A stretch of DNA of 64,000 nt from assembly GCA_033442325.1 (NCBI GenBank), contig JAWQFM010000011.1:53906-117905 (forward strand), written 5' to 3'. Both the position numbers and the translations under genes were made by a program. Below the pieces are notes generated by a model. The model did no database searches. It was not told where the DNA came from and was given only the letters and a program-made list of their open reading frames with translations. Shown one piece after another: positions 889 through 60,848 of the stretch (within the stretch, counting starts at the first letter, position 1; each line of letters starts with the position of its first letter). This DNA is from Salpingoeca rosetta. Lineage: Eukaryota > Protista > Choanoflagellata.

Positions 889-1743
889 AGACATGGGGGG
901 GGGGGGAGAGATTGATTGATGCGACGAGGGAGGAGTTGTCAGAACGCGGACACGAACGCAACAACGCATTCGGGACACCTGGTGATGATGTCATTCAAGT
1001 CCAATTAAACAAGTCAAACATGAATATCGGTGTGGCCCGGACGCAACGATGAAGTGCCTGCAGGTGCGAAGAAGTAGGCGAAGCAACACCACCACCACAC
1101 ACTTCGTGAGGCGACTTCACTTCACAACCCTGACCCAAAGTGTGTTGTGTCGTCCTGGGCTGCGTTCTGTTCTTGCTTCACCTCCTGTGTCACTACGCAA
1201 GCCTGTTGTGGCAATGGACGGTTGTTGTTGTTGTTGGGTGTGTGGCAAAGAAGCAACCCTTGGTTCATTTATCTCTTCGAGGTGTGTGGTGTGCGTTTGA
1301 GTGCATGAGTGGATGCACGCACCCCTGCCAGCCCTAGACAACCTATCCCCCCCCCCCCGCCCGGTCCATGCTTGCTTTCGCTTCCTTTCGCTTGTGCTTT
1401 CGCTTGTTGTCGCTTGCTTTGATCCGATCCCCCGTCTGCAATCAGCAATCAGCTGGCTGCTCTTTCCCCAAGCCAATCTCCTCTCCCCCTCCCTCCCCCA
1501 ATGCCTGACATGCTTTGCTGCCAATCACTCACTCCACTCCCCAAATGGTTTCTCTTGCTTCCACCTGGGTTCAGCGCTGTTGTGCAGGTCCTTTTGATGA
1601 GTAGAACAAGCGCTTCTTCTTCTTCTTCTTCCATCGAACCGTACACATAACTCCAAATCACTGCCAGCGCCAAAGGACCATTTCATCTCATCGCATTGCC
1701 AACTGCCCTTTTGTCTCCGTACTGACGACGACACAAGTCGGCA

Positions 1744-3056
1744 ATGTCGGACAACGACAACAACACCAACGCGCCGACACCGGCGACCACGACCACGGCT
1801 GCCACGCCATCCACGGAGAATGGCGGCACCCCTTCCATGAACGGCGACACGACCATCAAGCTGAACGGCTCCAAGGCTATGGCCGGCCTGACCCTCGAAC
1901 CGCTCGCAGAATCCCTCAGCTTCGACGAGGAGGATGAGGCGAAGCGACCCAAGGTGACCATGGAGTCCTTGAAGACCCTCGAAGGCTGGAAGAACGCCGT
2001 CCTCACCGTCATCTTTACTGTCCTGCCGATCCTCACCTGGGCACCCAAATACAAGTGCGTGCAACCACGTGTCGGTCGGTCTGTCTGTGTGCGTGTGTCT
2101 GTGTGTGTGCATGCGCGCTCGTGTGTCTGACTGTCGATCCCCCGTCGCTTGCTTCCCTCTCTTCCCCGTGTCCATCTCCTCCCCCTCACCAAAACCCTCA
2201 CTCACAACAGGGAAAACTGGAAGGAGAAGCTTGCTGGCGATGCAAGGGCTGGCTTGACCGTTGGTATTCTTCTGATTCCACAGGGTCTGGCCTATGCGCT
2301 CTTGGCAGAGCTGCCTGTGGAGTACGGCCTCTTCAGCGCCTTCATCCCCCCACTGCTGTATGGCTTCCTCGGCACGTCCAGCGAGCTGTCCACGGCCCCT
2401 GTCGCCGTCGTGTCGCTGCTGACCTCTGCAGGCGTGTCCGAGCTGTACGACCCGGTCACAGAGCGGCCGCAGTACATCGGCGCCGCCATCTCCCTCGCCC
2501 TCCTCCTCGGCTTTGTGCAGATGGGCATGGGCATCCTGCGTCTCGGTTTCATCATCAACTTCCTGTCCCACTCGGTGCTGAGCGGGTTTACCTCCGCCTC
2601 CGCCCTCATCATTGCGCTGTCCCAGCTCAAGCACGTGCTCGGCATCTCCATCGAGCGCAGCTCGCACGTGCACGAGGTGCTGCAGTGGACGTTTGAGGAG
2701 ATCCACAACGCCAACTGGCGCACAGTCGTCATCTCCCTCGCCAGCATGGCCATCATCCTCTTCTGGAAGTACCCGCCACAGTCCGAGAAGTTCAACTGGT
2801 TCCGCAAGTACTTCAAGCCCCTCCCCAGCGCCATGGTTGTTGTCATTATCTTCACCCTCATCTCAGCCAACACAGGCCTCAATGACAAGGGCGTGAAGGT
2901 GCGTCGTCACTGCTACCACCATTTCCTGCCACCATTTGTGACTTGACCCTCTCGCACAGAATACTGCTTTGTTGTGCGTGACTTTGCTCGGTTCTGTGTG
3001 CTTTTCCATACTCACACACTCGCACCCACACGTTCACACGCCCTCTCCCACCTGTT

Positions 3057-3113
<57 letters not shown>

Positions 3114-4599
3114 CAGATTGTTGGTGATGTGCCTGCTGGTCTGCCAACGCCGGAAGCGCCGGACACAAAGGACTTTGGAGACCTGCTGGTGTTGGTGCTC
3201 ACCATCGCGCTCGTGTCGTACATGGAATCAATGGCCATCGCCAAGAAGCTTGCTGATGACCGAAACTACCAACTCGACTACAACCAGGAGCTTGTTGCTC
3301 TCGGCGCATGCAACATTGTTGGCTCGTTCTTCCAGACATACCCAACCACAGGCGGCTTCTCTCGCTCCGCTGTCAACGCCAACGCAGGATGCAAGACACA
3401 GCTCGCCACCATCCTGGGTGTGTGTGTGCGTGTGTGCGTGTGTGTGCGTGCGTGTGTGTGTGTGCGTGCGTGTGTGTGTGCGTGTGTGTTGCCTCAATTT
3501 TTGGGTTGTTGTGATTGGTCAATGTGCTCGCCAAAGGCTCACGCCAACCTTGTTGCTTGCCATCGCGTGTGTGTGCTGTAGCTGGTATTGTTGTGATGAT
3601 TGCGCTGCTGGCTGCCACGGAGCTCTTCTTCTTCCTGCCAAAGGCCATTCTCGGTTCCATCATCATCATCGCCGTCCTCCCACTCGTCAACTTCAAGGTC
3701 AGCTGGTGGTGGTGTTGATGGTGATGCGCGTGGCTGTTGCTGTGTTGTCTTGCCTGCTTCTTTCTATCCCTCCTGCCACTGCTGCTGCTGTTGCTAGTGT
3801 TGTTGTTATTGTATCCGTTGCTGTTGGGAATTCTCTCTCACCCTTGCGGATGTGAATGTGTGCGCGCGCGATTGCGGTGTACAGGAGCCGTTTCATCTGT
3901 GGAAGATCAGCAAGATTGAGTCTGTGCTGACGGTTGTGACCTTCCTCCTCACCGCTTTCATTGGCGTCGAGCTCGGTGTCGGTATCAGGTGCGCAGCTCT
4001 TTGTGACCCTGCCTCTGCTCTGTGTGTGTGTGTGTGTGTGTGTGCGCGTGTGCATGCCGTCAAGGTACTTCAAACCTTGTCTTGCCACAATGCGCCGAGC
4101 ATCCATGACGCAATTCTCTCCCTCACACACGAACGTGTATGTGTCTTTGCAACAATGTGTTGGGTGCAGTATTGCGCTTGCGCTGCTTGCGGTGGTGTGG
4201 CAGGCGTCGCGTCCACACTACACGCTCGAGGGCCGCCTTCCCGGCACCGACGTGTACCGCAACATCAGGAGGTGGGTCCTGTGGGGTCCTGTGGGGTCGT
4301 GCGTGCACCGTGCGTTCTGGTGAATGGTCAACGGTGGACACACGAGCCGTTTGTGTCTTTCTCGGCTGTCTTGTTCAATTGGTGTTGTCGTGACGTATCG
4401 TACCGTGTGCATGGAGCCCATGATTTGCGCGCGTGCTGACGCCTGCACCCGCGACTGCTTGCAGGTTTCCTGATGCGATTGAGCCCAAGGGCATCAAGAT
4501 CTTCCGCTTTGACGCCGACATCTTCTTTGTCAACGCCACCGTTTTTGAGCGCCAAGTCCAGAAGAGGTGTGTTTATGTCTGCCTGTCTGTCTGCCTGCC

Positions 4600-4658
<59 letters not shown>

Positions 4659-5262
4659 TGCATGGTAGCTTGTGGGTGCTCCCGTGGTCGCCATGTGCCA
4701 CTATTTTTCTGCGCGTGCGCTGACAATGAGGGTGTGCGCTGTTTTGGCCTGTGCGGCTGCTTCAGGTGCTATGTGCGCGGCGTTGAGAATGTCATCATTA
4801 ACTTCACGCCCGTGAGCCACGTTGACTCCACCGCGTTCCACGCCATGGAGAAAGTGCTCGAGGTTCGTCCAAATGCTCTGTGTGTGTGTGTGTGTGTGTC
4901 TGTGTGTCTGTGTGTGTGTCTGTGTCTGTGTCTGTGTCTGTGTCTGTGTCTGTGTCTGTGTCTGTGTCTGTGTCTGTGGTGTGTCTGTGATATATGTGTG
5001 TACATACTTGTGCATCGTTGCGGTGCTCATGTTGCCCAACTCTGCTCCCCTCCTCAATCCAAAGTCACGACGTCTGTGTACCACATGAATGCTCACCGAA
5101 ACCCACCACACCACACCCCTCCACGCCAACAGGCTGCGGAGCGCAAGGGCATCTCTGTGTACTTTGCGGGCGTCAAGGGCCCCGTCCGTGACATCTTCGA
5201 GCGCATCGGCTTTACCGAGCACGGTGAGCATCCATGGCGGTGGTGTGTGTGTGCACATGTGT

Positions 5263-13848: not shown

Positions 13849-20537
<6,689 letters not shown>

Positions 20538-53416: not shown

Positions 53417-53990
53417 ATGGCGGAGCACACGAAGCTGTTGCACAAGCAGGGCGCAGGGCCGCAGCAGCGGTTTGGTGGCGGTGGCGGCATGATGGACAAG
53501 CCCAGCGTGTGGGACCAGGACCGCCCGCACGAGGGTGCGCTGGAGCGCGACATCGAGGACGACGATGGCGGTGGTGGTGCTGATGATGGTCAATATGAAA
53601 ACCGCGGCAGAAACTTGGAGGCAGGGGCGGCCGCCTTTGCCAACAATGCCCGCGCCAACAGCAACCACCACGTGCACAGAGAATCAGAGCGCCAGCGGCT
53701 GTTGGATGGCACCGAGGATGATCCGCCAGAGGCGCTCCTCTTCATGTGCTGTCCGTCGCCTGACTCCTGGACACAGGCATTTTGCGTGTGTGCCCTTGCC
53801 ACCGTGCTGACCATTTTGGCGACTGCCCTTGTCGGCTCTGCCGGCAACAACAAATACGCACCCAGCACCTTTGTCCAACGCGTCACCTACCAACAAGTGT
53901 GTGCGTGTGTGTTTGCGTTTGTAGGTGTGCGTGTGTGTTTGTAGGTGTGCGTGCGTGTAGGGTTGTGGTATGCGTGTATAAGGGTGCAAC

Positions 53991-54038
<48 letters not shown>

Positions 54039-55827
54039 TGCCTGCCTGTCTGTCTGTCGGTCTGTCCGAGTGAGTACGTTTCGACTGGTTGTTTTAGTTG
54101 CTGTGCCCGCTTGCTTTTCCACCACCACCACCACCACCACTGACACCACCACCACCACTGACACCACTCATCACCAACACCCTATTTCACCACCTCACGA
54201 CCACGGCCACCACCCCTGCCACTATTGCGACCACCCGATGCAGCTGTATGACCACTTGCACGAGCTGAATGCGACTGCAGCGAGCACGCCAGATGGCCCG
54301 CCGTCCCGGAGTGTCCTGTACGGGTTCAACCGCAGCGCCGCATATGTGGAGGCGCAGCTTGAGCCCCATCGCGCCGGGCTCACCAACGTCACCCGACAGT
54401 ACTTTGAGGCGCCCGTGTGGGAGGACAGGGGCAACCACACCATGACCGTGGCCAGTGGCAGCATCACCCTACACCTCCACCCCTACGTCGAGTTCCAGCC
54501 GCTCCGCTTCTCCGGCGGGACAGGCGACCCCATATCCGCGGTTGCCGTCAACTTTGACGGCGCCGCGTGCACGCGAGCGGCGTTTGCTGCGGCGAGCGGC
54601 AAGGTGGCGGTGGTGCCAGACACCAGCACGTGCAGCAACCTGTACCAGCGAGCGCGGGCAGCACAGCAGGCTGGCGCCGTGGCCATGGTGGTGTACCGAG
54701 AGCAGGCGGATGCCATGCTGCCCAACGAGCGCGTGCGAGACCCGACGTGGGCGTACAACGCCTCGGTCCCCTTTGTGCAGATCCCTGTTGTTGGCGTGGT
54801 GCACTTGCTAGCTGCCGCAGTTGCCGATGGGGTGCAGGTGAACATGACGGTCAACGCAGCAAGTGCCGTTGTGGAGACATTCAACCTGCTTGCTGTGCGC
54901 CAGGGCACGCTGCCGTACGCGGTTGTTGTTGGCGCCCACCTCGACAGCGTTCCGCGTGGGCCCGGCATCAACGACAACGGCTCTGGCGCGGCGGTGGTGC
55001 TGGCCATGGCGCAGCAGATTGCGCGCTTCAACCTCCGCCCAACCCTCACCGTCATCTTTGCCTTCTGGTCAGTCACTGCGATTGGTGTATGGTGCGGGGG
55101 GGGGGGCGTGTGCGTGGTGGGTGGAGAGGGGAGGTGATGGGGATGGGGTGTAGGTGTGTGCATCTTGTGGTCTTTCTTTGGCGACCACGAAATGGGTCGA
55201 TGGGACACACCCAGAAAAACGCACGCACACATGAATGCATCTACTCATCCACATCCACACACGCACACACACCCACGCACACACCCTCCCGCACACACCA
55301 CACCACCACACCACACGCACATGTTGTGCAGGGGCGCTGCTGAGGAAGGGCTGCTTGGGAGCGGGTACTTTGTGTCGAAGCTCAACTCCAGCGACACCCC
55401 AGTCCATGAGCCCGTCATTGCCAACATCAACGTGGACACGTTGGCCAGCCCAAACTACGCGCGCTTTGTGTACGAGGGCTCTCTGCTGCCGCCGGGCACG
55501 GCGCGTGCAGGATCCATCTTCCTGCAGCAGCAGTTTGAGGCGTATTTTTCCGCCAACTTGGAGGCGTTTGAGTACATGCCCTTTGTCACCAAGGAGACGG
55601 ACATTGACGGCTCAGACTACCTCCCCTTCTTCCTCCACGGTGTGTATTGTGTTGTGTGTTTCGTGTTTCGTGTGTGTTTGCGCGTGAGTGAGCGTGTGAG
55701 TGAGTGTGTGTGGGTGTGAGTGAGCGTGTGAGTGAGTGTGTGTGTGTGAGTGTGTGTGGGTGTTTGCCTGTGTTTGCTGGCGTTTGTGTGGTTCACATTT
55801 TTCCCCGCTCACACGCACACACACACA

Positions 55828-55905
<78 letters not shown>

Positions 55906-56158
55906 GATTGCTGTTGGCGGGGTGACGGCTGGAACGACGTCACTGAAGAACATCAAGCAGCGGTCGCAGTTTGGCGGGCTCTCTGGCGTTCCCTTTGACC
56001 CGTGCTTCCATCGCGCATGCGACACGTTTGAGAACGTCAACATGTTTTCGTTGTTGAATCTCGGGCACGCCACCGCCTATTCGCCCACGCCACCTTGCTC
56101 AACCTGTGCGGCCTCGTGTGCAAGCTCTCCTCCAAGATGGAGGGCGTGCACGACGTGA
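53417..56158 (+). CDS. Type II membrane-anchored PA-domain M28 (SGAP/aminopeptidase Y-like) peptidase; C-terminus after about 56080 looks non-native
   Basis: TM segment AFCVCALATVLTILATALVG, PA domain (ARAAQQAGAVAMVVY), GAHLDSVPRGPGINDNGSG, FAFW/GAAEEGLLGS, NINVDTLASPN, SDYLPFF and DPCFHRACDT. Exons about 53417-53896, 54244-55067, 55332-55639 and 55904 onward. Confidence 0.88.
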
Positions 56159-59100
56159 TGGTGGAGTGCGTGCGCCACAACTACTTTGACGCCTTTGTGC
56201 AGGGCTTCTACCACACCTCCCGAACCACCATCGCCGACCTGCCCACGTCGTCAAGCACAATCCGCTCCAACCACAGCACCTACCCCTTTCTCAAGTTCTT
56301 CGAGCACATCTTCGCCGCACGTAACCTCCTGTACGAGCTCAGGTTCCGCCTGCGTAGCGGTGCTCCTCTCCCGCGCACGTTCAACGGCGCTGTGGGTCAA
56401 TCCTCCAAGGACCAAGTGCTGCAGATGTACGAGACGGGGCTCGATCGCTTCGATCGCCTCATTGGCAAGCACGTCGCCTACCGCATGTTCTGCCTCTTCC
56501 TCGACGCCTTTGGCAAGCTGGGTGATGTCTTGCGTCAGGGCATTGAGGACGCGCTGGAGGCAGAGCGACACGAGGACAAGCAGCTCGTGCGCGATGGCAG
56601 CAAAGGTGATGGCGAGGACGCCGGTGACACCAAGGACGACGATGATGATGACGACGACGACGACGACGACGATGGCGATAATGGTGATGGTGACAGCACG
56701 GAGGGCAACAAGGAGCAGAAACAAAAGGAGCAGGGAGGCACTGTGGAGAAGTTCAAAGCCATCAACACGAGGCAGAAGGAGGAGTGGGTGCTGTGCTTGA
56801 GCCAGGGCGTGTCGCAGCTGACCAAGTCCCTCAGCTCGATGGTGGTGTTTGCCAGTGACCTGCCGTACGCCGCGCCAGAGCTCATGCTCATTGTGGAGCA
56901 GGCGGTGACCAACACCACCAGCAAGACGGCCCAGGCCTTCCAGCACCGCACCTCGGAGCGGGTGATTGAGCTGCTGGCCAACATCACGGAGCACGCCGTC
57001 GTGCGCGATGTCTCCGATGCCGCAGACGTGCGCGTGTCTGGCCAGCTGAGCGAGGAAGGGAAGAAGGTGTACCCGTACCTGCGCAAGGTGGAGCTTGTCT
57101 CCTCCGTCATCTTCCAGGCCAACCCCGTGCCCGTGCTCGTGTCCCTGCTGCGCGGCCGCAAGCAGCACAACAACGTCTTCCGCACCACCGCCCAGCTCAG
57201 CACCCAGATGGCCTGGTTCACGAGCGCCCTGCGTGCCCTGGCCAACCTGGCCAAGTCGAAGAAGGAGCACCGCCTGCGCATCGTGCACGAGGGTCTCGTT
57301 CCCGTCCTGCTCCGCTTCCTCATTGTCGGCAACCTCAAGCTGCGGCACAACGCCACGCGCTGCCTCAACGAGACGCTCAAGTTCACGCCGGAGAGCGTGG
57401 AGCAGTTTGTCAAGGAGCAGGGCCACCTCACCGTGCTGCGCTTGGCCCAGGAGGCCACGAACAAGGCCATCACCAGCGTGGACACCCGTCTCGAAGGCAT
57501 CCTCTTCAGCGTGCTCGGCGCCGTGTGCTCTGTGCCCGCGGGCGCCAACGCCCTGCTTGACGAGCCAGACTTTATGGAGCTGCTCTCCAACGCTGCACTC
57601 GAGCAAAAGGAGCTGTACACATCCGGTGGCGGCCTCAGCGGCGCGCGCCTCAACATGTGCGACAAGGTCAACCTGCTCTTCCTCCTGCTCACAGAGCTGC
57701 AGTTCCCGGCCAGTCTCAAGGAGGTGCAACAGCACCTGTCAGGCTTGCACGTGCAGCTGTCGCGCTCGCGCGAGTTCCGGGACAGGCACCACAGGGTGAG
57801 CGTCAAGATTGGGCGGGACAACGACAAGGCGCAGCGCCGGGCCGATAGCGCGCGGGATGAGGCTCTCGACATGAACGAGGACGATCCAGACTCGCAGCCG
57901 GAGCACGAGAGCGACCGTGACTCGCTCCAGGCCGGCGAGCTCTCCTCGCGGGATGGCGTGCCCTTGTCCAAGTTTGAGACGTATGTGTACCAGCTGGCCG
58001 AACTGGCCAAACTGTGCGCCGAGGATGAAGCGGACACAGCAAAGGCGGTGGCCGCTGGCACGCGCATCTGCTTCCTGTCGTATTCCTGGAAGCACAAGAC
58101 TCGCTTCAAGCAGCTGGAGCACGCCCTCAAACAGGCTGGCTTCACAGTCTGGCGCGACGAGAACGAGATGGGCAAGGTGCGCGTGCGTGTGTGTGTGTGT
58201 GTGTGCAGGCTGGGCAGTGGTTGTCGTTTTCGCATTGTGCGTGCGTGCGTGTGTGCGTGTCTTGTGTAACCTTGTGTTCGTGGGTAATTGTGTGCACGAT
58301 TTGCGTATGCGTGTGTGCGTTGCAGTGTGCCGTGTATGGTGCGCTCTTATCTCACCTCCCCATCTCACATCTTGTCACATTATTATTTGACTGGTTGCGA
58401 GTGCAGAAGGACAGCATCCTTGAAAGCATGGGCGACGGCATTCATGGGTCTGCGTGCGTGATCATCGACTACTCGCCAGAGTATGCCGAGTCGCACAACT
58501 GCCGCAGCGAGCTGCACTACGCCCACAAGAAGCGCAAGCCGCTCTTCTTCGTCAAGACGACGCGTGCGAACGTACGTTCTTGTGGTAGCTTCTGTCAGGT
58601 GCTTTTGCTTGAAGCGGCGATGGCCACAACCTCTTCGCGTCTGTCCGTCTTTGTTTCGGACATGCCAACGGCATCTCACGTTCTGTTCAAAACACACACA
58701 CACACACACATACACACACACAACACAACACACACACAAATGCACATAAACACACACACAACACAACACAACACAACACAACACAACACAACACAACGCA
58801 ACACAACACGCACGCACACACAAACAAACAAACAAACGTACGCGCGCGCAGCCACCGGACGGGTCCTCGCTTGACTTTGCCCATGGCAGCCACCTGTATG
58901 TGGACTACTCCAAGGTCAACTCCGGCACAGATTACCGCCGTCTCAACCAGCAGCTGTGCAACCAGATTGAGGCACGCCTCAAACTCCCGCCATCCGAGAT
59001 CACAGACGCCGGTTGGGGATTTGAGGAGACGCTCGAGAACTTCCTCTCGTATGCGGGCGTCACCCACGAAGACTCGCACCAAGCGCTGTCCATCCACGGC

Positions 59101-59803
59101 GTCAAGACGTACGCGCTGCTCAAGTCGCTGTCACGCGAGGAACTGCGTCATATGGGCGTAATGATGAGCGACGTCGTTGCCATCATGGACAAGCAGAAGA
59201 CATTCAAGCCGTCGGAGTTTGGCGGCTCGTCGGAGTTTGGCGGCTCGTCGCAGTCTGGCGGTCGTCCGTCTGCTTCGTCGTACTCCAGCACGTACACCAC
59301 CAGCCTGCCGTCAAAGGTGCAGCTGTCAACGCAGCAAGAGCATGAGCAGGCACCGCCACCATACCGCTCTGGGCACTCGACCAGAGAGCGCCCACTCCCG
59401 CCAACGCCGAGCACGGCGCCGGCCACCAGCGCTGCGCAGTCGGCTTACTCCACGTTGCAGCGTGATCCATCGTTCACCGCCCCGCCAACACGCCGCGCCA
59501 CACAGCGCCAAGGTGCGTGTGCATTGTGTTTGTATGTGTGGATGTGTGGATGTGTGTGTGTATGTGTGGATGTGTGTGTGTGTATGTGTGGATGTGTGTG
59601 TGTGTGTGTGCGTGTGTGTGTATGTGCGTGGGTTGTCGACACTGTTGCCACTAGTTTGGCGTGTGTGGCGCGTTCTCATTCACGCCTTCATTCACGCCTT
59701 CATTCACGCCTTCATTCACGCCTTCCCCATTCGCTTGCCTGTCGCAGACGATTTTGGCTTCGAAGGCTCCGAAGACGCCGTGTTTGATCTGGATGAAGCG
59801 TAA
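56095..59803 (+). CDS. ARM-repeat - TIR - SAM protein (SARM1-like domain set); N-terminus probably missing, first ATG at 56137
   Basis: Exons about 56095-58176, 58407-58571, 58852-59512 and 59748-59803 join in frame. ARM-like: ALRALANLAK..HRLRIVHEGLVPVLLRFL. TIR: CFLSYSWKHK...LKQAGFTVWRDENEM...ESMGDGIHGSACVII...SPEYAESHNCRSELHYA...KPLFFVK. SAM-like: LENFLSYAGV...LSIHGVKTYALLKSLSREELRHMGV. Confidence 0.85.
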
Positions 59804-60280
59804 ACCAATCACCACAAATCCTCCATTCGCCTCGGTGCTCATGTTGTTACCCACGCCCACCTCTGCCTTCTTCCATCTTGTTACACATACCAACAGTCAA
59901 CGTTCCGCAATGTTTGGAGGAACTGCCGCTTTCTCTTCCTTGTGCTCTCTCTGCCTTTGGTGCTTTCTTCACTGGCTGCCGATGTTGTTGTTTGTTGGTC
60001 GACACCCGCATGCTTGCTCATCGTGTTGGTGTTGAGATGCTTGCTTGCGTTTGTCTTCCTCGTGCCTTCCTGCTTTTGGTTTGCCTGTTTGTTTCTTCAA
60101 CTTACCCCACCAAACTGTGTTGCTGTCCTGTTGCCCTTGTCGTTTGTTCTGCGGCCTCTGTTCATGCATTTGTTCTCACGTTGCCTGAATGTGCGGTGGT
60201 TGTGATGCCCTCACTCATCACGCTCTCACTGCACATCAACCACACCACATGCACGCGCCTTTCGTTGCCCACACACACGC

Positions 60281-60326
<46 letters not shown>

Positions 60327-60848
60327 GCGCGCGCCTTTCGTTCGTTACACCCCCTCCTACCAATACACACAGCACGACACAATCAGCAGCCACGTCCAAC
60401 GTGTCTTGAAGCTGTTTTACAAATACGACTCGAAACTGGATGGTGTCAACCGCACACATCCGTCAACAAAAGAAAAAAAAAAGTCAGAGCAAGCACAGCT
60501 GCAGCAAGTAAACGTGCACAGCGTGCGCCCGCAAACAACAACTTAAACAACTTAAACAACAACAACAACTTAAACAACAACAACAACAACAACAACAACT
60601 TAAACAACAACAACAACTTAAACAACAACAACTGAGACAACAACAACTTAAACAACAACAAATAAGCAAGCAAGGGCAGACATATATGTTGCGGTTCTTC
60701 GAATAATGGTCAGGTTGTGCTGGCTGTGGTGGATGGATGGAAATAGAGATAAAAGCAGAGGAAAGGGAATCGCAACAATAATCAAAGCAGCAGGATCCGT
60801 GCATCTGTTGCACGTGATGCTGGTGGTGGAAAGTGGCGCACGAGGGCA

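What the first reader, a model, noticed from the sequence alone, without database searches (positions are those of the whole stretch)
56095..59803. Domain-permuted SARM1-like ARM-TIR-SAM protein with intact TIR catalytic glutamate: candidate NADase or immune/cell-death effector in a likely choanoflagellate
Seen: four exons splice in frame into ARM repeats, a TIR domain (FLSYSW, VWRD, NCRSEL; Glu codon at 58509-58511) and a SAM-like domain. Established: SARM1 is ARM-SAM-SAM-TIR, where ARM senses and autoinhibits, SAM oligomerises and the TIR cleaves NAD+ using the Glu of the (W/C)xxEL helix. The same chemistry is used by plant TIRs and bacterial Thoeris. Inference: this is a sensor-oligomeriser-NADase with a different domain order in a unicellular relative of animals. 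Similar orders may already be catalogued in invertebrates, so novelty needs checking.
Basis: partly seen in the sequence, partly recalled or inferred. Interest (0 to 1): 0.8.

Follow-up and report, generated by a model that had tools for sequence, protein, structure and literature searches.

The report
Choanoflagellate ARM-TIR-SAM gene, truncated here
This is a real, weakly expressed protist gene encoding armadillo repeats, a TIR domain and a probable SAM domain in that order, but it is not a rearranged SARM1, its TIR lacks a tryptophan that cyclising TIR enzymes carry, and the window holds only the 3' part of the gene.

Summary
The four exons are real. An RNA contig reproduces all three GT..AG introns, and stranded RNA reads lie on the + strand at low depth.

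- **TIR:** genuine. It reads continuously across two introns and scores 70.9 bits against a family profile. The Glu at 58509-58511 aligns with the catalytic Glu of Cat1, RPS4 and AbTir.
- **ARM:** genuine repeats.
- **SAM:** only sub-threshold evidence.

1. The gene is cut at 56080. Its transcript carries about 2.3 kb more 5' sequence that is absent from the window, so the 973-residue model starts inside the protein.
2. It is not a permuted SARM1. The TIR matches SARM1 by sequence more weakly than it matches Cat1, RPS4 or AbTir, the ARM repeats are of the importin type, and choanoflagellates have true SARM1 homologues.
3. The helix-C Trp is Asn throughout this family. Cyclic-ADPR-producing TIRs all carry an aromatic residue there.

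The ARM-TIR-SAM order is shared with Mylnosiga fluctuans and one further genome. Atlas clusters dominated by green algae also combine Arm, TIR_2 and SAM_2.

Verdict: a new variant of a known kind, of moderate interest. Other agents of this scan noted other TIR fusions in this genome, which they took to be Salpingoeca rosetta.

The parts
56080..56080 (+). Breakpoint: the window lacks the 3' end of the M28 peptidase gene, the intergenic DNA and the 5' exons of the TIR gene
   Evidence: 33 and 60 RNA reads of the upstream gene leave here with one consensus. RNA contig X4 record 10 enters here with about 2365 nt more 5' sequence. Neither flanking 30-mer occurs in the window. There is no GT/AG at the junction.
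56080..58176 (+). Exon 1 as far as the window holds it. The frame is open from 56032, and the ATG at 56137 is most likely internal
   Evidence: The letters before 56080 in the RNA contig continue the frame without a stop.
56627..56694 (+). Acidic low-complexity run (poly-Asp)
   Evidence: reads and contigs break at this repeat.
57097..57696 (+). Armadillo / helical repeat region. The canonical repeats recognised lie at 57217-57474
   Evidence: Pfam ARM_ARMC5 E 4e-5 and Arm E 9e-4. Designed ARM proteins in the PDB match at E 2e-11. The region is colinear with the Arm-positive region of Mylnosiga P0003.
58072..58176 (+). TIR domain, part 1 (strand A FLSYSW to the BB loop)
   Evidence: TIR_2 profile positions 2-34. 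Family profile 70.9 bits over residues 646-752 of the spliced protein.
58177..58406 (+). Intron 1, phase 0, in the TIR BB loop
   Evidence: GT..AG. RNA contig. L002 has an intron at the equivalent position, within one codon.
58407..58571 (+). Exon 2: TIR domain, part 2, including helix C with N-C-R-S-E
   Evidence: TIR_2 31.1 bits, above the cutoff of 28.
58497..58499 (+). Asn codon at the position of the conserved helix-C Trp (AbTir W204)
   Evidence: Profile alignments to Cat1, RPS4 and AbTir. The family alignment shows Asn in all three ARM-TIR-SAM members.
58509..58511 (+). Glu codon at the catalytic position (AbTir E208, and the Glu of W-C-x-x-E in RPS4 and Cat1)
58572..58851 (+). Intron 2, phase 0, microsatellite-rich
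58852..58980 (+). TIR domain, part 3 (strands D and E, helix E)
   Evidence: profile match to residue 752. Predicted strands and helix, at low confidence.
59008..59205 (+). SAM-like segment
   Evidence: All evidence is sub-threshold: SAM_EPH E 0.022; Caskin-1 and EphA SAM E 0.1-0.6; Atlas SAM clusters 0.80-0.82. The homologous Mylnosiga segment gives SAM_1 E 0.004 and five predicted helices at pLDDT 60-76.
59206..59512 (+). Ser/Pro-rich low-complexity tail, with a tandem SEFGGSS
   Evidence: It is absent from the Mylnosiga clade.
59513..59747 (+). Intron 3, phase 1
   Evidence: GT..AG. Five spliced reads in X20 and the RNA contig.
59748..59803 (+). Exon 4: acidic C-terminus and stop codon (59801-59803)
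59804..60262 (+). 3' untranslated region, at least this far
   Evidence: RNA contig X4 record 11 runs to 60262.

Best explanation
Shown:
- This is the 3' part of a real, spliced, weakly expressed gene of a choanoflagellate. Other agents of this scan name the genome Salpingoeca rosetta; I did not verify that.
- The encoded protein is large and shows no secretion-related domain in the part seen. Its C-terminal 760 or so residues run helical/armadillo repeats, then a TIR domain, then one SAM-like segment, then a disordered acidic-ended tail.
- It belongs to a small family with the same order in Mylnosiga fluctuans and in one further genome.
- Its TIR belongs to a eukaryotic subgroup with the helix-C motif S-x-N-C-x-x-E. 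That subgroup keeps the catalytic Glu but has Asn in place of the conserved Trp.

Inferred:
- The family arose independently of SARM1 by combining the same kinds of domain.
- The SAM-like segment self-associates and brings TIR domains together, so that they form the two-TIR active site known from SARM1 and AbTir.
- The TIR then hydrolyses NAD+ to linear ADPR rather than making a cyclic ADPR signal.
- The ARM region and the large unseen N-terminal region hold the protein off or receive the input.

The enzymatic step is the weakest link. A purely scaffolding TIR is almost as likely.
For: - Gene reality: splicing and strand.
- TIR: Pfam TIR_2 on both halves. It scores 70.9 bits across the exon joins against a profile of relatives. 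The Mylnosiga homologue scores TIR_2 63 bits and folds as a TIR: VIA Z 17.0 to Hydra TRR-2, 15.3 to MyD88, 15.1 to SARM1 TIR.
- Glu: it aligns with the catalytic Glu of Cat1, RPS4 and AbTir and is kept in all three ARM-TIR-SAM proteins.
- ARM.
- Conserved order: blastp of the window protein (residues 321-838) against Mylnosiga (882-1365) gives E 3e-24 and is colinear. L002 has the same order and an equivalent BB-loop intron.
- SAM-like: several weak hits, most of them to SAM domains.
- Literature: TIRs that make only ADPR show weaker conservation of the Trp position. A S. rosetta TIR has measured cADPR-producing activity that depends on the Glu.
Against: - No SAM hit is significant, and the window's own SAM-like segment folded poorly as a single sequence (pLDDT 44.6).
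- Asn replaces the helix-C Trp. W-to-A at that position abolishes NADase activity in the plant TIRs L6 and ROQ1 and reduces it in AbTir. The domain may therefore be inactive.
- No activity, oligomer or ligand data exist for any member.
- The N-terminal 800 or so residues are unseen here, and the Mylnosiga N-terminus has no Pfam match, so the input side is unknown.
- Expression is low (depth 0.5-8, against 20-60 for the neighbouring gene).
- If the break at 56080 is a real deletion in the assembled strain, the gene is broken in that strain.
Confidence: 0.45

Rival explanations
1. Non-enzymatic scaffold. The TIR is a protein-protein assembly module, like classical Toll-pathway adaptors. The ARM repeats and the SAM-like segment recruit partners or build a signalling polymer, and no NAD+ is cleaved.
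For: - Asn stands at the Trp position that lines the nicotinamide/isoquinoline site in AbTir and SARM1. W-to-A kills plant TIR NADase activity.
- The best structural matches include adaptor and receptor TIRs: Hydra TRR-2, MyD88 and TIRAP.
- One relative, the third TIR of P0006, has lost the Glu.
- Another agent of this scan described a degenerate TIR-ARM scaffold gene in this genome (unchecked).
Against: - The Glu is kept in all three ARM-TIR-SAM proteins and in most TIRs of the subgroup.
- A 2026 preprint reports that even TIRs once taken for pure adaptors, such as TLR4, are catalytic through this Glu.
Confidence: 0.35
2. This would be a SARM1 relative whose domains were permuted, keeping an NMN/NAD+-sensing autoinhibitory ARM, a SAM ring and a cADPR/ADPR-producing TIR.
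For: - The same three kinds of domain are present.
- SARM1 TIR is among the tied top structural matches (Z 15.1, rmsd 2.2 over 124 residues).
- The Glu is present.
Against: - SARM1 TIR is a weak sequence match (E 0.04-0.1), behind Cat1, RPS4, AbTir, PdTIR and TLR2/15.
- The ARM region hits importin-type and designed ARM proteins and no SARM1 chain at E up to 10.
- There is one SAM-like segment, placed after the TIR.
- Trp is replaced by Asn.
- Choanoflagellates already have SARM1 homologues in a separate gene family.
Confidence: 0.05
3. In the genome that was assembled, the locus is a 5'-deleted remnant. A real deletion at 56080 removed the promoter and the first exons, together with the end of the M28 gene, so this copy makes no normal protein. 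The RNA seen comes from other strains that carry the intact gene.
For: - The break is clean, shares only 1 nt, has no splice signals, and neither flanking sequence is elsewhere in the window.
- No RNA read supporting the window's junction was reported.
Against: - It could equally be an assembly error.
- A first-reader note reports another gene in this window with missing or replaced exons (unchecked).
- The RNA runs carry the same species label and match the exons at 99% or more.
- The downstream reading frame is fully intact.
Confidence: 0.15

Closest known systems
SARM1 (animal ARM-SAM-SAM-TIR NAD+ hydrolase)
   Same: It has ARM repeats, a SAM-type segment and a TIR with a Glu at the catalytic position. 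The TIR fold superposes well on the homologue's model (Z 15.1). The plausible logic is the same: regulatory repeats, an oligomeriser and a TIR.
   Different: - The order here is ARM-TIR-SAM, with one SAM-like segment instead of two.
- The TIR sequence is no closer to SARM1 than to bacterial, plant or TLR TIRs.
- The ARM repeats are importin-like, with no SARM1 hit.
- The helix-C Trp (W638 in SARM1, from my own knowledge) is Asn.
- The protein is far larger, and its N-terminal region has no recognised domain in the Mylnosiga relative.
- Separate SARM1 homologues exist in choanoflagellates.
Mylnosiga fluctuans EP00047_P005662 (P0003, 1381 aa, uncharacterised) and the L002 gene of GCA_040960315.1
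   Same: These are true relatives. They are colinear through ARM, TIR and SAM-like (E 3e-24), share the S-x-N-C-x-x-E motif, and have an equivalent BB-loop intron in L002.
   Different: - Identity is only about 25-35%.
- The window protein has a 120-residue Ser/Pro tail, a poly-Asp run and probably a longer N-terminus.
- None of these proteins has been studied.
Invertebrate and choanoflagellate ARM-plus-TIR proteins (Richter et al. 2018; Aplysia 'ARM-TIR' class; ecTIR-DC families)
   Same: These are cytosolic TIR proteins paired with armadillo folds. Richter et al. noted Arm with TIR in several choanoflagellate species. Aplysia has 11 ARM-TIR genes. An Atlas cluster of 121 mollusc proteins carries TIR_2 and Arm.
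   Different: The phrase 'ARM-TIR-SAM' occurs in no paper of the library.
ESM Atlas clusters with TIR_2 + Arm + SAM_2 (about 730 aa, commonest phylum Chlorophyta)
   Same: They carry the same three Pfam domain types in one protein, and their TIR superposes on the family model (TM 0.58 by the model, rmsd 2.3-2.4).
   Different: The proteins are shorter and come from a different eukaryotic supergroup. Their SAM is a clear SAM_2, whereas ours is sub-threshold.
Catalytic TIRs of bacteria and plants (Cat1, AbTir, RPS4, ROQ1, ThsB)
   Same: These are the best sequence matches of the family profile. The Glu aligns with their catalytic Glu.
   Different: They carry Trp four residues before the Glu, and this family carries Asn. 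They are coupled to other domains (CARF, coiled coil, NB-LRR).

Membership tests
TIR domain (Pfam TIR_2, PF13676) | Profile match above the curated cutoff | tested here: met
   Exon 2 alone scores 31.1 bits against a cutoff of 28, and the exon 1 tail scores 23.6 bits on the adjoining profile positions. The homologue P0003 scores 63 bits.
TIR domain (Pfam TIR_2, PF13676) | Flavodoxin-like TIR fold | tested here: met
   Tested on the Mylnosiga homologue only. In the model the TIR part has pLDDT 71-93. Foldseek and VIA top hits are all TIR domains, with Z up to 17.0. The window's own TIR is split over three exons and could not be submitted.
NAD+-cleaving (enzymatic) TIRs | Glu at the catalytic position of helix C | tested here: met
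   The Glu of N-C-R-S-E (58509-58511) aligns with the catalytic Glu of Cat1, RPS4 and AbTir E208 through the family profile.
NAD+-cleaving (enzymatic) TIRs | Aromatic residue (usually Trp) four residues before the Glu, present in all tested cyclase TIRs | tested here: not met
   Asn at 58497-58499, and Asn in all three ARM-TIR-SAM proteins. The requirement is described.
NAD+-cleaving (enzymatic) TIRs | Measured Glu-dependent NAD+ consumption | not testable with these tools
   Needs a biochemical assay.
SARM1 orthologues | Domain order ARM, two tandem SAM domains, then a C-terminal TIR | tested here: not met
   The order is ARM, TIR, then one SAM-like segment.
SARM1 orthologues | TIR and ARM sequences closest to SARM1 among known proteins | tested here: not met
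   The TIR profile gives SARM1 E 0.04-0.1, against Cat1 3e-7 and RPS4 4e-5. The ARM region gives no SARM1 chain at E up to 10. No tree was built, because no SARM1 sequences could be fetched.
SARM1 orthologues | Allosteric NMN/NAD+ pocket in the ARM domain | not tested
   No alignment to SARM1 ARM was obtainable.
SAM domain | Significant profile match to a SAM family | tested here: inconclusive
   SAM_EPH E 0.022 in the window, and SAM_1 E 0.004 and 0.22 in homologues, all below cutoff. Profiles of two or three members hit SAM domains first but only at E 0.1-0.6, and a TNK1 domain ranked second in one search.
SAM domain | Five-helix bundle | tested here: inconclusive
   Five helices are predicted in the Mylnosiga segment at pLDDT 60-76. 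The window segment alone reached only pLDDT 44.6.
Armadillo repeat proteins | Tandem ARM repeats detectable by sequence | tested here: met
   Designed ARM proteins match at E 2e-11, with importin-alpha weaker. Pfam Arm scores 19.6 bits, just under the cutoff of 20.6, in the window and 31.1 bits in Mylnosiga.

The most novel reading that the evidence does not exclude
The S-x-N-C-x-x-E TIRs would form a distinct Trp-less enzyme class. I saw this motif in the window's protist, in Mylnosiga, in a chytrid fungus and in metagenomic eukaryotes. Fused to ARM repeats and a C-terminal SAM polymeriser, such a TIR would give the sister group of animals a SARM1-independent, convergently built NAD+-consuming switch, possibly with a product or substrate different from those of known TIRs.
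Probability: 0.15. Interest if true: 0.6.

Novelty: new variant of a known kind. Interest (0 to 1): 0.35.

Why it matters
[quoted passage not shown] This family shows that the ARM, TIR and SAM combination was assembled more than once, in another order, beside true SARM1 homologues. That is useful for separating what in SARM1 is ancestry from what is recurring design.

The consistent Trp-to-Asn change next to a retained catalytic Glu gives a natural test of what that Trp does. The practical value is limited: Arm-plus-TIR combinations in choanoflagellates were already noted in 2018, three-domain combinations exist in other eukaryotes, nothing is known of function, and this window carries only part of the gene.

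Tried and rejected
- **Word-index homologue searches.** Two searches with exon 1 found nothing. The likely cause is that only proteins of 374-1190 residues were candidates while the true protein and its relatives are longer, so these blanks say little.
- **Exhaustive phmmer.** It gave only 6 hits and no near-identical protein. This gene's product therefore seems absent from the public protein sets searched. I could not tell whether the genome's annotation misses it.
- **Exon 2 against the PDB by phmmer.** Only spurious RAD51B matches came up, and a single Mylnosiga TIR+SAM sequence also failed to reach any solved TIR. A six-sequence profile was needed.
- **Single-sequence structure prediction of the window's exon 3.** Too poor (pLDDT 44.6) for a fold search.
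- **Finding the missing 5' part.** Both 30-mers that flank the break in RNA are absent from the window, even with 3 mismatches.
- **Naming the organism.** An exact look-up of ten long ORFs from the window found none in the collection. The name Salpingoeca rosetta comes only from other agents' notes.
- **Literature.** 'ARM-TIR-SAM' occurs in no paper, and 'ARM-TIR' refers mostly to the SARM1 domain interface. The ecTIR-DC catalogue paper itself is not in the library.
- **TIR tree with SARM1.** Not built, because no tool left could fetch SARM1 or other reference TIR sequences.
Full report
**1. What is in the sequence**

The region 56095-59803 holds a + strand reading frame in four pieces. With exons 56137-58176, 58407-58571, 58852-59512 and 59748-59803 the pieces join in frame through three GT..AG introns of 230, 280 and 235 nt, giving 973 residues and a stop at 59801-59803.

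**2. Transcription and splicing**

I laid two stranded RNA-seq runs and two sets of run contigs on 54500-60300.
- One run's contigs are spliced and are therefore RNA. Its record 11 covers 56695-58172, 58405-58571, 58852-59510 and 59746-60262, which means all three introns are removed as predicted and there is a 3' UTR of at least 460 nt.
- Five raw reads span the last intron.
- All reads have the first mate on the - strand, as expected for a + strand RNA in the usual stranded libraries.
- Depth is low (0.5-8), against 20-60 for the gene upstream.

**3. The gene is cut at 56080**

- RNA contig record 10 (2948 nt) matches 56080-56626 and then continues for about 2365 nt of upstream mRNA that does not match the window. 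The 30 letters before 56080 continue the reading frame without a stop.
- At the same base, all reads of the upstream gene leave the window with one consensus that continues that gene's own frame (33 and 60 reads, agreement 1.0). That upstream gene is a PA-domain M28 peptidase.
- Neither 30-mer occurs anywhere in the 64-kb window. There are no splice signals at the junction, and only one base is shared.
- The window therefore lacks a segment holding the peptidase gene's end, the intergenic DNA and the 5' exons of the TIR gene. I could not decide whether this is a real deletion in the assembled strain or an assembly fault.
- The ATG at 56137 is thus almost certainly internal, and the true protein may approach 1,700-1,800 residues.

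**4. Domains**

*TIR.*
- Pfam TIR_2 hits the end of exon 1 (profile positions 2-34, 23.6 bits) and exon 2 (positions 38-89, 31.1 bits, above the cutoff).
- A profile built from the TIRs of relatives scores 70.9 bits over residues 646-752 of the spliced protein, reading straight through both exon joins.

*ARM.*
- Pfam gives near-threshold hits.
- A PDB sequence search gives designed armadillo proteins at E 2e-11 and importin-alpha more weakly, with no SARM1 chain.

*SAM.*
- The window segment 59008-59205 gets SAM_EPH at E 0.022.
- The Mylnosiga and L002 equivalents get SAM_1 at E 0.004 and 0.22.
- Profiles of two and three members hit Caskin-1 and EphA SAM domains first, but only at E 0.1-0.6, and a TNK1 domain ranked second in one search.
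- Atlas feature hits to SAM clusters score 0.80-0.82.
- The Mylnosiga segment is predicted as five helices at pLDDT 60-76.
- The window segment folded alone was unusable (pLDDT 44.6).
- I call it SAM-like, probable but unproven.

**5. Relatives**

- Word-index searches were blank, most likely because of their length limits.
- The exhaustive search found six proteins and no near-identical one.
- The only full-length relative is Mylnosiga fluctuans EP00047_P005662, 1381 residues, from a choanoflagellate transcriptome. It carries Arm (31 bits), TIR_2 (63 bits) and sub-threshold SAM_1. It aligns colinearly with the window protein from ARM to SAM-like (321-838 against 882-1365, E 3e-24).
- A search with that protein found a 61%-identical gene on an NCBI genome contig (GCA_040960315.1). 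Its next ORF supplies the rest of the TIR and the SAM-like end. Its TIR is interrupted by a phase-0 intron in the BB loop, within one codon of the window's intron 1.
- Fragments from a Tara Oceans sample and from ENA metagenomes are closer to the window protein (46-62% identity).
- All three ARM-TIR-SAM proteins share S-x-N-C-x-x-E in helix C. The same motif type occurs in a three-TIR metagenomic protein and in a two-TIR protein of the chytrid Polychytrium aggregatum.

**6. Is the TIR SARM1-like, and is it catalytic?**

- By sequence, the profile of this TIR subgroup matches these solved structures, best first: Cat1 (3e-7), RPS4 (4e-5), AbTir (3e-4), a SEFIR domain, PdTIR, TLR2/15 and Roq1. 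C. elegans TIR-1 and human SARM1 follow at E 0.04-0.1.
- By structure, the Mylnosiga model is a standard TIR. Hydra TRR-2 scores Z 17.0, and MyD88, SARM1, TIRAP and RPS4 are tied at about 15. Structure therefore does not single out SARM1.
- In the printed alignments the family's Glu pairs with the catalytic Glu of Cat1, RPS4 and AbTir (E208), and the family's Asn pairs with the Trp four residues earlier (AbTir W204).
- The cADPR-isomer preprint (bioRxiv 10.1101/2022.05.07.491051) reports four relevant results: W204 contacts the nicotinamide-mimic ring; W204A lowers activity and cuts 2'cADPR from 93% to 24%; L6 W131A and ROQ1 W82A lose NADase activity; and every tested cyclase TIR has W, Y or F at this position, with weaker conservation among ADPR-only TIRs.
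- If this TIR is an enzyme, I therefore expect linear ADPR and not a cyclic signal. It may also be inactive.

**7. Comparison with what is known**

- Richter et al. 2018 (PMC6040629) reported choanoflagellate SARM1 homologues that keep the catalytic Glu. Separately, they reported that Arm, Ank and SH2 domains accompany TIR in several choanoflagellate species.
- Aplysia has 11 ARM-TIR genes (PMC9334734).
- Invertebrates have conserved TIR-domain families of unknown role (PMC6321704).
- A 2026 preprint measured Glu-dependent cADPR production for many eukaryotic TIRs, including one from S. rosetta.
- A shape search in the ESM Atlas found two clusters, commonest in Chlorophyta, carrying TIR_2 + Arm + SAM_2, and a mollusc cluster with TIR_2 + Arm.
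- The string 'ARM-TIR-SAM' occurs in no paper of the library.
- The domain combination is therefore not new. The order, the single C-terminal SAM-like segment and the Trp-less motif are undescribed details of an uncharacterised family.

**8. Mechanism**

The gene, its splicing, ARM, TIR, the Glu, the Asn and the conserved order are shown. The following steps are inferred:
- SAM-like self-association concentrates the TIRs.
- A composite TIR active site hydrolyses NAD+ to ADPR.
- The ARM and N-terminal regions regulate the protein.

I put this at about 0.45. A non-enzymatic scaffold stands at about 0.35, a true permuted SARM1 at about 0.05, and a locus that is a deleted remnant in the assembled strain at about 0.15. 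That last reading concerns this copy of the gene and not the family.

**9. Verdict**

This is a new variant of a known kind, with interest of about 0.35.

Other agents of this scan had already noted several other TIR fusions in this genome, including a TIR-SAM ending and a TIR-ARM protein, and named it Salpingoeca rosetta. I did not verify those notes.

Noticed in passing
window 53782-56080 (+): The upstream gene is a PA-domain M28 peptidase (Peptidase_M28 E 2e-15, PA E 1e-8). It is well expressed, and its introns 55067-55330 and about 55641-55912 are confirmed by RNA. Its 3' end is missing from the window: its reads leave at 56080.
   Followed up: partly
window 58236-58267: This is a 33-nt stretch inside intron 1 covered by very abundant RNA, with loose ends on both sides and C>T at 58256 in every read. 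It looks like a short match to a highly expressed transcript from elsewhere, not part of this gene.
   Followed up: no
window 16953-17768: A first-reader note says the MCM3 gene here lacks its Walker A/B exons, with foreign exons in their place. Together with the break at 56080, this suggests the assembly of this window may have several local faults.
   Followed up: no
L002 (GCA_040960315.1, JBFOMO010024100.1) 1333-4886: A two-exon gene encodes a Mylnosiga-like ARM-TIR-SAM protein of about 1141 residues. In the database it is called as two separate proteins (957 and 184 residues), and its intron lies in the TIR BB loop.
   Followed up: partly
P0003 residues 1-870 (Mylnosiga): The large N-terminal region has no Pfam match at E up to 1. 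It contains two similar modules with a Y-x-x-W ... R-W-[FV]-I motif, and its start looks PH-like by eye. This may be the input domain of the family.
   Followed up: no
window 59206-59800: The C-terminal tail is specific to this species. It is Ser/Pro-rich, carries a tandem SEFGGSS-SEFGGSS and ends in an acidic, Phe-containing stretch, which could be a short linear binding motif.
   Followed up: no
window 55680-55905, 58680-58850, 59520-59640, 60270-60330: The introns and flanks are packed with (CA)n, (GT)n and (CAACA)n microsatellites. Assemblies and read mapping break at these repeats.
   Followed up: no
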